DNA of 64,000 bases from Diadema antillarum (taxonomy: Eukaryota), in NCBI RefSeq assembly GCF_040938485.1, contig NW_027270961.1:2728001-2792000 (forward strand). The letters run 5' to 3'. The notes beneath the pieces were generated by a model. The model did no database searches. It was not told where the DNA came from and saw nothing but the letters and a program-made list of their open reading frames with translations. Of this stretch, positions 28,589 to 38,632 are shown one piece after another. The translations under genes were made by a program, and so were the position numbers. How positions within the stretch are numbered: position 1 is the first letter of the stretch; each line of letters begins with the position of its first letter.

Positions 28589-31007
28589 AAAACAAATAAT
28601 CATAAATCAAAATCTTCGTTATCATTATCGTCATCATTATTATCATCATCACCGACATCAGCATGACTAAAAGATTTTAAGTCGCATGTTCCTAATCCAA
28701 GTTTTGCTTAGGTAGCATTGAAGCAAATAAACATGTCCAAATAAACATGTCCAAAGCATTCCGCACATGACGCGTCGTCCTACGACAACCGATTAGACAG
28801 GAAATAAATTCAATACACGGCATAGGTCATCACAGCTATAGACGGTACAAGCAAGGCGTGTCCTTTAGTCCATGGGCCAGGCCAGATATTGGTACCATCT
28901 GAGGTGGCAAAACCTTTTTGGTGTCATTTTGTGTGTCGGGCATAGATATGCTTATCAAGCTATGATAGCATTTCCAAATGAGTAGCTTAGTCATAGTAAA
29001 TGAATTTTTCACCAATCTGGTCTCGTTGCTATATCCCTATACTTCTGAATCGAAACTAACCGCCTTACAAAGAAGAGCACTGTCTTCTGTATGTTCCATA
29101 GAGCTGTAAAATGCAGCTATATGGTATGTTCACAGGTGTTCTGTTGTAAACGCGGTGCGCTTAGTCTTTATTCAAGGCAGCGAAGGGAATATCCAAAGGT
29201 TATGATGTCCACAGCGCTTAGTCCTTATTCTAGACGGCGAAGGGAATATCCAAAGCGTATGATACAGTGTATATCCTTTTATCTAAAAACAACAACAACA
29301 ACAAAAGCAATTCCTAGTGAATTTTACCGTATTTTTCAATCATTTATCATTTTCCGGTGAAAACGCTACGGTGAAAACGCTGATACCACGCCAATGTCGC
29401 TTTATTTCCCTCCAACAATATAAGATAATGCAAAAACAATGTACCGGTACACTACGATACATTATAATGAATGATATTGTAAATGAACAGAGTGATTTTT
29501 GTTTAAAACTGATGTATTTGTTGATAGGGTAGTATAAAAATAGTATAGATAATCCCTTTTATGAGGAACTTTAGATATGATAACGGTACATTGGTCTAGA
29601 TAAAGAACTAAGCGCACCGCGTGACAGCTGTGGACATCATAACCCTTTGGATATTCCTTTCGCTGCCTTGACTAAAGACTAAGCGCACCGCGTTTACAAC
29701 AGAACACCTGTGGACATACACACAGAGAAATTAGGGTTCTATTAGGGTTCTTATTTGCACCCTACGAGCAAATCTAACTAAGTGGCACCTTATAGGGTTC
29801 GGGATGGATGTAGAGGTGCAAATCCGAACCCTAAAGGGAGCCAAGTCTTAAGGGTTCGAATTTGGAACCATTCCATAGTCTTTCCCGAAAGCTGACATGT
29901 GGGTGTTGAATGGTGTTTGCTTAAAATGCCACACTATTTTTGGATATTATCGTATATTTTTATTTGAAAATATAACTACACGTTGTTAAAGAGTAACAGT
30001 GTCATCAGTAATACTGTACTAAAAAAATTACTACTTGAATTAAACACTTGTTTTTTCTTCTCGCACCGGGATCAAGAATATCATTTCAATGACGTTATCA
30101 TAGAGAGAAAGCAAACGAGTACAAGTACACGTATTATGCATGCACGCGTGGACCGTTGAGCACTTGGTCAATGGCAAAGCTAAAATCGCATGCGCACGCC
30201 ACGCCGTAGGTCGCGCGGTATACGTACGTGCATACTACTGACGTTCCTCGTTTGGAATGGACAGACGACCGTGAGGTAGGGATGATGAATTAATCTTTTT
30301 GATGGGCCAAACGTTGTGAGTAGATAATTGTACTGTAATTCCGTTGAAAATATTTCACAGTAATCAATGGTATGTGTGAATTATGCTCATAGAATACTGA
30401 GTGGTGAAAACTGATGCGAAAGAGTTGTATCGAGGTACATGTGTACTAACATGTCAGAAGTGCGATCATACATACAGTAAAGCATAGCGAATAAGTCAAT
30501 GAAAGTGCACGTTAAAGACCTAATAAAATGGTTTAGGCATTTTTTTCTCAATGATGTTATAATATTAAATGTTAAATTCTAAGTAATTCTATGGTTGTGC
30601 GGGGTTTTTTACTGTTCTGAATTTTGTTCTATATTTGTTAACATAATGGATGCAATTTCCTCGGTTTTGGAAAACTTGCTATACTTTCACCGCATGCGGC
30701 GCACTATCACTTCTAAATTGTGATGACGTCTAAGAACGGAGTCGTTCACGACCAGTCTAGCCGTAGCCAGCGAGCTGGCAAGGCTATGCTAGCGCAGCGC
30801 AGCGACAGCCGGCCGGCGGCTGAATGCACTGGCTAGCGCTGGCGGGGGAGCGAGCTAGCGAGCGCATAGCAGGTGCTGCGCTGCACTATTGTCATTGGCT
30901 AAGCCTTTAGACAAAAGAATATTTAATGAACTGTATCGGATTTAATACCGCCAATAATACAGATTACAGCTGTGGTACGCTTGGATATCCATTATTTTCG
31001 GCAAACT

Positions 31008-31430
31008 CGTGAAATAGGCCCCACCACTGCGTGTCTGTACTAATAGTAATACTACGGCGACTCGCCTGTTTCAGCCCCACCGTGTGGCGTTCATCTCGGT
31101 AGGTAAGCACGGTGGTGGGGCTGCCTTCCACAGTGAATACTCGTGAATGCGGCGAAAATGACTTCATAATATGGCCCTCGACTAATTTAACGGCCAATTT
31201 AACCATAAATACAACCCTACCTAACCCTAAACCCAAGGAGGACCTACCCTTGCTTGCTTTAAACGCACGGGTACGGTGCACGCGCACTGCGGTGGGGCCT
31301 ATTTCACGATAGCCCACCATCACTGCGTGTCTGTACTAATACTACGGCGACTCGCCTGCTTTATAGGCCTAGACCTACTCGTGAATCCAGCCCCACCGTG
31401 GCATTCATCGGTAGATAAGCACGGCGTTTG
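31008..31430. mobile_element. Inverted-repeat-bounded unit with partial tandem duplication, Helentron/HINE-like
   Basis: TCGTGAAATAGGCCCCACC at about 31007 is inverted as GGTGGGGCCTATTTCACGA at about 31290-31308, and an internal CCTACCTAACCCTAAACCC motif is present. Blocks CACTGCGTGTCTGTACTAATA..CTACGGCGACTCGCCTG and CAGCCCCACCGTG..GTA(G)GTAAGCACGG each occur twice, about 290-315 bp apart. Confidence 0.45.
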
Positions 31431-32041
31431 GGCTTCCTTCCACAGTATGATTTTTAGCATAAAACAAAAACTACTCGACCAAAATTGACGATAATTCTTG
31501 GTATCGTTTTTCTTAGAAAATGGCGCATCTAAATTACTGATAACAAACATTGCAGAAACTGACTATGGGAAACTGGTTAGGCTTTTTTTTTTTTTGAGCC
31601 ACGACCCACCCTGTAACAACATATCCCCCTAACCGTTAGGCGTTAGAGTGTAGCCTCTGTACTACTACCAAAGATTCTGCTATTACTACTTACTAGTCTA
31701 CTAGACCTAGTGCCGTAGTGGTAATAGTACTACTACTAGTAGTAGTACTAGTAGACTACTACTACTAGTAGACTACTATAACTACTAGTAGACTGCTACT
31801 TGATCTACTACTAGACGACTACTGGTAGTTTAACTTGTAAGCGCCGGCCGACGGGCCAGGCCACGGCCGGGACGCTCCCGCTTGCTTGCTGCGGCCGAAG
31901 TAGCCGCTCACTTTGTGAGCGAGCTGGGCCTGTTCTTCTAATCTACTTACTAGACAAACAGTTACAACTTACAATGTCAATCATGTAGAATACAGTATAT
32001 CCTTTCTAAGGTTAAACTATATGGGGGCATACCAGACATAC

Positions 32042-35996: not shown

Positions 35997-37334
35997 ATAT
36001 ATTTTGCTCCTGATCATTATGCTTGTGATGGTGCCAATACCAATACCTGCTTTATAAATGTGAAAAATCGACTGCTCTTTACAATATTTTGAATGTTGGG
36101 GCTAAACTGCATACATTGTGTAATTATATTTATGGTCTACTGAGTACAATGTGCTTCTTGTTTCCATCGCTTGAAAAAAAAACAATGTATTAAAAAAAAT
36201 CGTTTTTAAACTTGTCTCACTGAAGACATATTCCTTCCTCTTTATGTCCAGTTTGTCATACCACTGATTGGTTAACCTTATTTTGCCTTTCTGAGGTAAC
36301 ATTTTCTGTGGAATTGTTAATGTTAATTTGATGCAATGAAAAGTGTTTTCAGATGTGCTATTCTGCCCGAGATTTATAACTGGGACATATCTTTAGCTGT
36401 GTTCATAAAAAAGTAACCAAATTTAGATGTGCATTCTTCATTTTTTGATTCTTTTTTTTTCACCTTTCTTATCATTGGTGTAATTGTATATGAAAAACAA
36501 AATGTGAAGTATACTAATTGTATAATGGGACACATTCGCAAGCTCTCAAGCTTGGAATTGGATGGAATATGTCAGTACAAGTAGTGAGTTTCAAATATAT
36601 ATGACAGAACTTTGAGATACCCTTCATTGTTTTGGCAATAACTTGTGTACGAGAAATCAGAGTTGACATATCGCTGTTAATGTCTAAGAGCGTCATAAAG
36701 GTGCTTTTGATTACCGTAAGATGTACCAGTAAATTCAAGGTACATATCTATGATCCATTCTAGAAGTAGAAGGACAATGTGAAAGATATTTGTCACATAG
36801 TTTACTATTACTCTGCACAAGCTTCAGGGATTTTTTGTATAAAAAGAATTAGTGCTTTTTGTCAATGTGGTAACTTCCTTTAAAAGAAGAAAAAGTAATC
36901 ATTTGATGGAAAGAACGAATATTTTTCTTCTTATTCAGTGTACTGACCAAATTTCATACATTTTTGATTTACATTGCCCTTTTTATGACAAAATATGCAT
37001 CTCGTTTGAGAATTTGTAGAAATACAATGTATATTTGATGTTCATTTTAAAGTAAACCATGAAAAAGAAAACCGCTGTTAACTTGTACCTCTTCCATGAG
37101 ACATATAATAAAATATTAATAATTTATATGTAAGTATGCACTGTATTCATCATGTTTATGTTCTATTTGTTGTTGAATTGAAGTCTCTGACTTTAGTTTT
37201 CGTAAGATTGTGGATTTAATTGACTGAGAAACTGTGTGTAAATCTATGCATGCTATTTTGCTTCATGTCTGGAGTGTTACCTTAGGTAATTGTTTGTGAA
37301 GTCAGTGAATGCATCCAGTATATAATTATTTTGG

Positions 37335-37960
37335 TTTTAAAAAAAGGTTATAATTTTCACCATATGGGGTGCAGAAAGGTAACCCTATATAGAGACGTGT
37401 GCAAATTGTATTGCATCCTATATTGCGGTGACTTTATCACCCCATAGGGTGCAAAATTACAACAATAACAGTATGAACCATAATGGGTGCAGGTATGAGG
37501 TGCAGAAGGGGAACCCTGTATAGAGGTCCATATTTGCACCTTATAGGGTGTTGAATATAGGGTGCTAAATAAGAACCCCCAAAAATAGAACCCTAAATGG
37601 AGCCGCTGGTGTTACAACAATATGAACCAGAAAGGGTGCAAATTTGCACCTGAATTTTTGTTCACCCTATGGGGTGCAGAAAGGGAACCCAATGGAGGGG
37701 TGCAAATATGCACCATATCTGGTGTTAGATATAGGGTGCTAAATAAGCACCCCCAAAAATAGAACCCTAAATGGAGCCGCTGGTGTTACAACGATATGAA
37801 CCCTATTGGGTGCAAAAGGGAACCCAATGGAGGGGTGCAAATATGCACCATATATGGTGTTAAATATAGGGTGCTAAATAAGCACCCCCCAAAATAGAAC
37901 CCTAAATGGAGCCGCTGGTGTTACAACGATATGCACCCTCTAGGGTGCAAATTAGAACCG
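37335..37960. repeat. Subterminal repeat array of the EnSpm/CMC-type element
   Basis: A unit of about 62 bp, ATAGGGTGCTAAATAAG.ACCCCC.AAAATAGAACCCTAAATGGAGCCGCTGGTGTTACAAC, occurs at about 37557, 37731 and 37866, with many GGGTGCAAA/TTTGCACC motifs. Confidence 0.9.
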
Positions 37961-38632
37961 TAATTTCTCTGTGTGTACAGAAGGCAGTGCTCTTCTTTGT
38001 ATAGCGGTTTAGTTTCGATTCAGAAGTATAGGGATATAAATACGAGACCAAATTGGTTAAAAATTCATTTATTATGACTAAGCTACTCATTTGGAAATGC
38101 TATCATAGCTTGATAAGCATATCTATGCCCGACAAACAAAATGACACCAAAAAGGTTGTGCCACCTCAGATGGTACCAACAACCCATTTTTCGGGTCTTG
38201 GCCCATGGACTACTTTGGTAATTTTATCCGAGGAACCTTACATGGACGAAGGTGATGAGTGCCAGTGTCCACACATTTCTTTTTCAATGTTCCAAACATA
38301 ATTATGTCATAGAGAGTGAGTTTCAGAATATTTGACGTTTCTGATACATGATAATGGTTTAACATTTTGAAGACCTACTTGGACAACGTTGGCAATTTTG
38401 ATATTAACTAAATGAAAAAGCTCTTAGTTTGGGTGATTTGGGGAATGTTATGAAACTATAGCTGGTAGAAATTTTGAATTCGATGGCTTATAACAAATTG
38501 TCACCCCGAACGCCCCATACAACTTCTCATTGTGAAAACTTAGTCATGTACATGAAGGCGTGCAGCATCCAAAGCGTCGGTGCCAACCTGATGACGGCTC
38601 GGCCAGCCGTACGCGCAGCGCCGCTGTCCGGG

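What the first reader, a model, noticed from the sequence alone, without database searches (positions are those of the whole stretch)
28866..38212. Nested transposon stack: Academ > EnSpm/CMC > Kolobok > Helentron-like, with an in-window empty-site control
Seen in sequence: three nested layers each have their own TIRs and intact TSD. These are CTT (3 bp, TAG..CTA ends), TA (2 bp, CAC..GTG ends, 29719-37975) and TTAA (AG..CT ends, 30516-32743). A fourth IR-bounded unit at 31008-31430 has less certain ends. Removing the inner layers restores a 1088-bp element nearly identical to the uninterrupted copy at 15636-16719, whose corresponding site reads GGACATACAGAAGG. Established: these end/TSD signatures define separate cut-and-paste superfamilies. 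Inference: the EnSpm element entered a young Academ MITE, so it was mobilised recently despite having no transposase. The Kolobok, BEL and HINE pieces may have travelled as its cargo.
Basis: partly seen in the sequence, partly recalled or inferred. Interest (0 to 1): 0.72.

Follow-up and report, generated by a model that had tools for sequence, protein, structure and literature searches.

The report
Three nested DNA transposons, not four
Three non-autonomous cut-and-paste transposons inserted one inside another at this spot in a marine animal genome, which is a clean example of an ordinary event in a genome full of young DNA transposons.

Summary
Three of the four claimed layers are real, with exact boundaries.

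- **Outer layer (28866-38212):** a 1.09-kb element with TAG..CTA ends and a CTT target-site duplication (TSD).
- **Middle layer (29719-37975):** a 6.0-kb CACACAG..CTGTGTG element with a TA TSD, split by the inner layer.
- **Inner layer (30516-32743):** a 2.2-kb AG..CT element with a TTAA TSD.

Removing each insert plus one TSD copy restores the sequence found in 11 of 11 other outer-family copies and, for the inner insert, the sequence seen in other middle-family copies. All 19 other middle-family copies lack the inner element. Both internal junctions occur once in the 1.75-Gb assembly.

The fourth "Helentron-like" unit (31008-31430) is not a separate insertion. It is fixed interior of the TTAA family.

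The cargo idea is half right. The TTAA element arrived later. The BEL/Pao gag relic sits in all 14 other copies aligned there and matches about 600 genomic places, and an old 0.4-kb repeat lies in interior shared by all aligned copies.

The Kolobok and EnSpm/CMC labels fit published end and TSD signatures, but no transposase link was tested. The Academ label is unsupported: the 3-bp TSD is not exclusive, and no transposon-like XPG nuclease copies were found.

Five of 19 sister copies of the 6-kb family carry their own nested elements, so the stack is ordinary here. The scan had already noted this same stretch (s1-211253, s1-211292).

The parts
28863..28865 (.). Left copy of the 3-bp target-site duplication (CTT) of the outer element
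   Evidence: matching CTT at 38213-38215
28866..29718 (+). Left part (853 bp) of the outer 1.09-kb non-autonomous element. It has TAG..CTA ends, a 14-bp perfect TIR extending to an imperfect inverted repeat of about 210 bp, and an inner inverted repeat. Its last two bases (29717-29718) are the TA target of the middle element.
   Evidence: 96.3% identical to copy A over 855 bp
29719..30515 (+). 5' part (797 bp) of the 6.0-kb CACACAG-ended non-autonomous element, with AGGGTTC subterminal repeats. Its last four bases (30512-30515) are the TTAA target of the inner element.
30516..32743 (+). 2228-bp non-autonomous TTAA-inserting element with AG..CT ends and a 15-bp perfect TIR. This is the Kolobok signature. 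It includes the claimed fourth unit (31008-31430) as fixed family interior.
32744..32747 (.). Right copy of the TTAA duplication made by the inner element
   Evidence: other copies of the middle family have a single TTAA or GTAA here
32748..37975 (+). Rest of the 6.0-kb element. The interior is shared by all aligned sister copies. It ends in about 610 bp of GGGTGCA / GAACCCT subterminal repeats, including units of about 150 bp, and the 3' TIR.
33460..33932 (+). Relic of a BEL/Pao Gag N-terminal coiled coil. It is a 116-aa frame in sister copies, broken in this copy by a private 1-bp insertion near 33699.
   Evidence: (table 4)
35240..35690 (+). Copy of an old interspersed repeat of about 0.4 kb, lying in the interior of the 6-kb family that all aligned copies share. 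It is about 80% identical to window 46618-47005.
37976..37977 (.). Right copy of the TA duplication made by the middle element
   Evidence: copy A and 10 other copies have a single TA at this site
37978..38212 (+). Right part (235 bp) of the outer element, 99.2% identical to copy A
38213..38215 (.). Right copy of the CTT duplication
15636..16719 (+). Uninterrupted sister copy (copy A) of the outer element, with TSD AAT. Its site GGACATACAGAAGG at 16478-16491 is the paralogous empty site.

Best explanation
Three separate cut-and-paste insertions happened in order at one locus.

1. A 1.09-kb non-autonomous TIR element inserted and duplicated CTT. Its family has roughly 1,900 first-look matches in the genome.
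2. A 6.0-kb non-autonomous CAC..GTG element inserted into a TA at the inner edge of that element's right arm and duplicated the TA. Its family has at least 235 copies with both 22-bp ends intact.
3. A 2.2-kb non-autonomous AG..CT element inserted into a TTAA 797 bp inside the 6-kb element and duplicated it. Its family has roughly 1,100 first-look matches.

None of the three encodes a transposase, so each must have been moved by an enzyme made elsewhere in the genome. This last step is inferred.

The 6-kb family carries a BEL/Pao gag fragment and an old 0.4-kb repeat that its founder had already picked up. The proposed fourth unit is an internal repeat structure of the TTAA family, not an insertion.
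For: - **Exact ends and TSDs** at all three layers.
- **Family-wide TSD rules.** The outer family has 3-bp TSDs of varied sequence in 10 of 10 loci. The middle family has 2-bp TSDs in 18 of 18, of which 16 are TA. The inner family has TTAA in 9 of 9.
- **Paralogous empty sites.** Eleven of 11 outer-family copies carry the uninterrupted GGACATACAGAAGG. Nineteen of 19 middle-family copies run straight from 30515 to 32744.
- **Unique junctions.** Each internal junction occurs once in 1.75 Gb, allowing up to 2 mismatches.
- **Uniform interior.** Identity is 96.5-99% along the whole 6 kb among 15 copies.
- **Intact ends genome-wide.** There are 232 + 238 exact TIR hits against 0 in the control, and the listed pairs are mostly 5.95-6.07 kb apart.
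- **No transposase.** No long open frame and no Pfam transposase in any copy.
- **Possible enzyme source.** CMC-type transposase matches (PF02992) with open frames up to 873 aa exist elsewhere in the genome.
- **Order of events.** Private changes are 0.83% in the outer copy and 0.59% in the middle copy, which is consistent with the nesting order.
Against: - No allelic or orthologous empty site was seen for the outer element. Only its TSD supports that insertion.
- No autonomous partner was linked to any of the three families.
- The private-change figures are upper bounds from small samples, and they do not differ statistically.
- The public runs were available only as short contigs. They gave no locus-specific junction or polymorphism evidence.
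Confidence: 0.9

Rival explanations
1. Cargo model: the TTAA element, the BEL piece and the HINE piece all travelled inside the 6-kb element when it entered the outer element.
For: The BEL/Pao gag relic is present in all 14 other copies aligned at that stretch and matches about 600 genomic places. The 0.4-kb repeat lies in interior that all aligned copies share at uniform identity.
Against: The TTAA element is absent from 19 of 19 other copies, which run straight from 30515 to 32744. Its junction with the 6-kb element is unique in the genome. It has its own TTAA duplication.
Confidence: 0.05
2. Four layers: 31008-31430 is an independent Helentron-like (HINE) insertion inside the TTAA element.
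For: There is a 34-nt inverted repeat, 79% complementary, at 31007-31040 and 31276-31309.
Against: At least 28 full-length TTAA-family copies span the stretch without a break. Its 40 best genomic matches all extend beyond the proposed ends, and those that could be checked lie inside TTAA-family copies. It has 808 first-look candidates, against 1109 for the whole element. There is no TSD. The proposed ends coincide with two direct repeats of about 130 bp. An ancient insertion into the family's founder cannot be excluded.
Confidence: 0.07
3. Assembly artefact: the 29719-37975 block was wrongly joined into a repeat copy.
For: All three families are high-copy and young, which is where assemblers fail. 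A 178-base N block lies 277 bp left of the stack. The short public contigs neither confirm nor deny the junctions.
Against: A false join would not land exactly at both TIR ends with a duplicated TA and leave an outer element that rejoins perfectly to the family sequence. The same holds for the TTAA layer.
Confidence: 0.03

Closest known systems
Kolobok superfamily non-autonomous elements (for example Xenopus T2-type MITEs)
   Same: Both have a TTAA-specific 4-bp TSD and 5'-RR..YY-3' termini (here AG..CT), which is the published rule separating Kolobok from piggyBac (PMC9587614).
   Different: This element has no transposase, and no autonomous partner was found or linked. At 2.2 kb it is larger than a typical MITE. 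It has a GC-rich palindromic interior and a 111-aa acidic open frame with no Pfam match.
Animal EnSpm/CACTA (CMC) non-autonomous elements, for example ENS1_Cis and the CMC-NA MITEs
   Same: Both have invariable 5'-CAC..GTG-3' termini and a 2-bp TSD (PMC6004678, PMC12730594). Both have short subterminal motifs in opposite orientation at the two ends.
   Different: This element is 6 kb with no transposase. The TSD strongly prefers TA (16 of 18). The interior holds a BEL/Pao gag relic and an old 0.4-kb repeat. The link to the genome's PF02992 transposases was not tested.
AcademX
   Same: Both make a 3-4-bp TSD (PMC10045372). The outer family makes 3 bp.
   Different: AcademX is tied in the literature to an encoded nuclease (PMC10045372), which from memory is XPG-type. 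The genome shows only 7 short, exon-like XPG_I matches. Academ termini could not be looked up. A 3-bp TSD is shared with Chapaev/EnSpm, Harbinger and Zator.
Nested transposon insertions used as relative-age markers in plant and animal genomes
   Same: The logic is the same: an insert is younger than its host element, and paralogous empty sites define the TSD.
   Different: Nothing differs in kind.

Membership tests
Kolobok (inner element, 30516-32743) | TTAA-specific 4-bp TSD | tested here: met
   The window copy plus 8 of 8 other copies have it. The empty site in sister 6-kb copies has a single TTAA.
Kolobok (inner element, 30516-32743) | Termini 5'-RR..YY-3' (PMC9587614) | tested here: met
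   AGACC..GGTCT in 9 of 9 copies.
Kolobok (inner element, 30516-32743) | Kolobok DDD/E transposase, or a demonstrated autonomous partner with the same ends | not testable with these tools
   No open frame matches Pfam. I know of no Pfam model for the Kolobok transposase.
piggyBac (alternative for the inner element) | Termini 5'-CC..GG-3' (PMC10045372) | tested here: not met
   The ends are AG..CT.
EnSpm/CACTA-Mirage-Chapaev, CMC (middle element, 29719-37975) | 5'-CAC..GTG-3' termini | tested here: met
   Eighteen of 18 copies. There are 470 exact 22-bp TIR hits in the genome.
EnSpm/CACTA-Mirage-Chapaev, CMC (middle element, 29719-37975) | Short TSD of 2-5 bp; animal CACTA elements are reported with 2 bp | tested here: met
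   The duplication of 2 bp is shown directly by the paralogous empty site. Sixteen are TA, one CA and one AA.
EnSpm/CACTA-Mirage-Chapaev, CMC (middle element, 29719-37975) | Subterminal repeated motifs at both ends | tested here: met
   AGGGTTC occurs 5 times in the first 140 bp (4 of 5 on the + strand) and 5 times in the last 470 bp (all on the - strand). GGGTGCA occurs 11 times near the ends. Neither occurs in the 5.1-kb interior. This feature is not exclusive to CMC.
EnSpm/CACTA-Mirage-Chapaev, CMC (middle element, 29719-37975) | CMC transposase, or an autonomous partner sharing the TIRs | tested here: inconclusive
   None lies inside the family. PF02992 matches exist elsewhere, 15 in all, with open frames up to 873 aa. 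Their ends could not be read.
Tc1/mariner (alternative for the middle element) | Strict TA TSD | tested here: not met
   Two of 18 copies have matched non-TA duplications, CA and AA.
AcademX (outer element) | 3-4-bp TSD | tested here: met
   Ten of 10 loci have 3 bp: CTT, AAT, TGT, CAG, TAT, AGT, TGA, ATT, ACT, CTA.
AcademX (outer element) | Autonomous elements encoding a transposase plus a nuclease (XPG-type, from memory) present in the genome | tested here: not met
   PF00867 gives only 7 matches in open frames of 63-122 aa, as host genes would. All 15 candidates were scored.
PIF/Harbinger (alternative for the outer element) | 3-bp TSD with TWA preference | tested here: not met
   None of 10 TSDs is TAA or TTA. 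The TWA rule for Harbinger is from my own knowledge.
Zator (alternative for the outer element) | ISAzo13-like transposase in the genome | tested here: inconclusive
   PF07592 gave no match, but the control genomes did not ring either.
Helentron/HINE (claimed fourth unit, 31008-31430) | A discrete element with its own copies and insertion boundaries | tested here: not met
BEL/Pao fragment (33460-33932) | Protein similarity to BEL/Pao Gag | tested here: met
   Four hits carry DUF1759, one of them also DUF1758. The match lies in residues about 32-118, upstream of that domain. E-values run from 2.5e-10 to 3e-4 on 1.8 billion proteins. Identity is 70% over 44 aa and 52% over 56 aa.

The most novel reading that the evidence does not exclude
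The outer family, with roughly 1,900 first-look matches at about 98% identity, TAG..CTA ends and a non-specific 3-bp TSD, may belong to a superfamily whose autonomous partner is unrecognised in this genome. It might be neither XPG-bearing Academ, nor Zator, Harbinger or CMC. All three families may also still be moving, so that this locus is polymorphic among individuals.
Probability: 0.15. Interest if true: 0.4.

Novelty: new member of a known kind. Interest (0 to 1): 0.18.

Why it matters
The locus gives in-genome proof of the target-site duplication of two families: 2 bp (TA here) for the CAC..GTG family and TTAA for the AG..CT family. It also fixes the relative order of activity of three young DNA-transposon families. 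That helps anyone curating this genome's repeat library. It shows that large 6-kb elements with no transposase were moved efficiently here. It does not change what is known about transposition.

Tried and rejected
- **Pfam on ten open frames** from the stack and its sister copies: nothing.
- **ESM Atlas look-alikes** for the gag-like frame and for the 111-aa frame of the TTAA element: blank.
- **Linking the 6-kb family to a CMC transposase.** The own-genome search with the 116-aa frame returned only family copies.
- **Public reads.** Only short contigs were available. They show the family-level form without the TTAA element (joint 30511 to 32744, depth 862 in X1, against a unique-flank depth of 12-18 in three of the four runs). 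They give no locus-specific junction or presence/absence evidence.
- **Selection on the 116-aa frame: rejected.** Changes among copies are mostly amino-acid-changing, and identity there equals the rest of the element.
- **Papers giving Academ termini** (Kojima 2020; Yuan and Wessler 2011) are not held.
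Full report
**What is there**

The window is part of a 1.75-Gb assembly (contig C73). Public runs that hold this stretch include marine metagenomes.

Reading the sequence confirms three nested units at the coordinates given.
- The outer unit starts TAGTCCATGGGCC at 28866 and ends GGCCCATGGACTA at 38212. 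CTT lies on both sides.
- Inside it, CACACAGAGAAATTAGGGTTCT starts at 29719, and its inverted partner (one mismatch in 22) ends at 37975. TA lies on both sides.
- Inside that, AGACCTAATAAAATG starts at 30516, and its perfect inverted partner ends at 32743. TTAA lies on both sides.

**Empty sites**

A self-comparison shows 28866-29720 matches 15636-16486 at 96.3%, and 37976-38212 matches 16483-16719 at 99.2%. Rejoining the two parts without one TA gives 1088 bp, 97.2% identical to copy A. The rejoined site reads ACCTGTGGACATACAGAAGGCAGTGC exactly, as in 10 of the 11 other copies. The eleventh differs at one base outside the 14-bp site. This is a paralogous empty site, not an allelic one, but it proves a 2-bp duplication.

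For the inner layer, all 19 other copies of the middle family run straight from 30515 to 32744. Among the 15 copies aligned, that site reads TTAA in most and GTAA in one subgroup.

Each internal junction occurs once in the assembly, even allowing two mismatches. So each nesting is a single event at this locus, and the composite has not been copied elsewhere.

**The three families**

*Outer family.*
- It has 1,917 first-look candidates. All 40 scored copies are full length at 96-99% identity.
- Ten of 10 distinct loci have perfect 3-bp TSDs of varied sequence.
- Mean pairwise identity is 97.8%. The interrupted copy has 9 private changes in 1084 positions, or 0.83%.
- It has a 14-bp perfect TIR that continues as an imperfect inverted repeat of about 210 bp.

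*Middle family.*
- There are 232 + 238 exact hits to the 22-bp end and none to the control. The listed pairs are mostly 5.95-6.07 kb apart.
- Seventeen full copies were read. Fifteen have a TA TSD, one CA and one AA.
- Mean pairwise identity is 97.5%, even along the whole length. Some pairs reach 99.5-99.65%. The window copy has 34 private changes in 5810 positions, or 0.59%.
- No open frame exceeds 132 aa, and Pfam finds nothing, so the family is non-autonomous.
- AGGGTTC and GGGTGCA motifs cluster at both ends and are absent from the 5.1-kb interior. AGGGTTC lies mostly on the + strand at the 5' end and on the - strand at the 3' end.

*Inner family.*
- It has 1,109 first-look candidates, and at least 28 copies cover all 2,228 bp at 95-98%.
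- Eight of 8 other copies end AGACC..GGTCT between two TTAA.

**The fourth unit**

The same 28 or more full-length copies cover 31008-31430 without a break. A search with 31000-31450 found fewer candidates (808) than the whole element. Its 40 best matches all extend past the proposed ends, and those that could be checked lie inside copies listed. The stretch consists of two direct repeats of about 130 bp (31005-31134 and 31317-31446, 87-93% alike) and a 34-nt inverted repeat (31007-31040 and 31276-31309). There is no TSD. It is family interior, not a layer.

**Cargo**

The TTAA element came later (above).

The rest of the 6-kb interior is shared by all aligned copies. A 116-aa frame at about 33.57-33.93 kb matches roughly 600 places in the genome and is open in most of them. 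In the window it is broken by a private 1-bp insertion near 33699 (table 4, 65).

An exhaustive HMMER search gave 12 hits. Four carry DUF1759, one of them also DUF1758. The match always lies in residues about 32-118, upstream of that domain. Identity is 70% over 44 aa and 52% over 56 aa. Changes among copies are mostly amino-acid-changing, so it is a relic.

A stretch at 35240-35690 is about 80% identical to window 46618-47005. That stretch belongs to an old repeat of about 0.4 kb with 3,173 first-look candidates at about 75% identity. I could not test that name.

**Superfamily labels**

- **Inner element.** TTAA with RR..YY ends is the published Kolobok rule, against CC..GG for piggyBac (PMC9587614, PMC10045372). 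This is met.
- **Middle element.** CAC..GTG termini with 2-5-bp TSDs mark the CMC group, and animal CACTA elements with 2-bp TSDs are described (PMC12730594, PMC6004678, PMC4079192). This is met. The two non-TA duplications argue against Tc1/mariner. The genome has 15 PF02992 matches with open frames up to 873 aa, but I could not read their ends.
- **Outer element.** AcademX does make 3-4-bp TSDs (PMC10045372), but so do Chapaev/EnSpm, Harbinger and Zator. The ends are not CAC..GTG, and none of 10 TSDs is TWA. XPG_I gives only 7 short, exon-like matches. The ISAzo13-type transposase gave nothing, with silent controls. The outer family's superfamily stays open, and I put Academ at about one in four.

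**Is it a misassembly?**

This is very unlikely. A false join would not fall on both TIR ends with the right duplication and leave host sequences that rejoin perfectly, twice. The public runs were only short contigs. They showed the family-level form without the TTAA element and a unique-flank depth of 12-18 in three of the four runs, but nothing locus-specific. A 178-base N block lies at 28411-28588. I left it alone.

**How unusual?**

Five of the 19 other 6-kb copies carry their own nested elements:
- a 567-bp TIR element;
- a 1,052-bp AG..CT element with a TTAA TSD;
- a 1,207-bp element with a TA TSD;
- a 2,854-bp element with a 6-8-bp TSD;
- a 6.4-kb LTR retrotransposon with a 1,132-aa RT/RNase H frame.

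Nesting is routine in this genome.

**Verdict**

This is a correct and neatly documented three-layer stack. The fourth layer and the Kolobok-as-cargo idea are wrong, and the Academ label is unsupported. The finding is ordinary biology of low interest, and useful mainly for repeat annotation.

Noticed in passing
L048:2259-5654 (minus strand): Another copy of the 6-kb family carries a 6.4-kb insertion with an open 1,132-aa frame holding SCAN-like, RVT_1 and RT RNase H domains. This looks like a Gypsy-like LTR retrotransposon. It is described only, and nothing was built from it.
   Followed up: partly
L034, L039, L044, L049 (inserts at element positions corresponding to window 35238, 35779, 35884, 33634): Four more sister copies hold nested TIR elements: 567 bp (TAA flanks), 1,052 bp (AG..CT ends, TTAA), 1,207 bp (TA flanks, about 81-86% like window 6213-7434) and 2,854 bp (TSD of 6-8 bp).
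   Followed up: partly
window 46618-47005 and 35240-35690: An old interspersed repeat of about 0.4 kb with 3,173 first-look candidates at about 75% identity. It has GGTCATTTGTACC near both ends and a palindromic GCATGTGCA motif. Its class is unknown.
   Followed up: partly
window 28411-28588: A 178-base N block lies 277 bp left of the outer element. It was left untouched. It limits how much unique left flank is available.
   Followed up: no
window 28020-28400 and 31680-31830: ACTACTAGTAG-type short tandem repeats occur just left of the N block. Similar repeats (75-78%) lie inside the TTAA element.
   Followed up: no
L009 and L010 (C823:546321, C2:2470749); C587/C1386 PF02992 hits; C578 three outer-family copies: Some loci are identical including their flanks, or recur with equal scores. 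This suggests duplicated haplotype contigs or segmental duplications in the assembly, so copy counts are somewhat inflated.
   Followed up: no
window 31977-32312 (minus strand): A 111-aa acidic open frame lies inside the TTAA element. Another first-stage note (s1-211292) calls it a P2X7-ballast-like first exon. It has no Pfam match at E up to 1 and no Atlas look-alike.
   Followed up: partly
window 30512-30515 versus sister copies: Only one subgroup of the 6-kb family has TTAA at this site. Another subgroup reads GTAA, so only some copies offered this target to the TTAA element.
   Followed up: no
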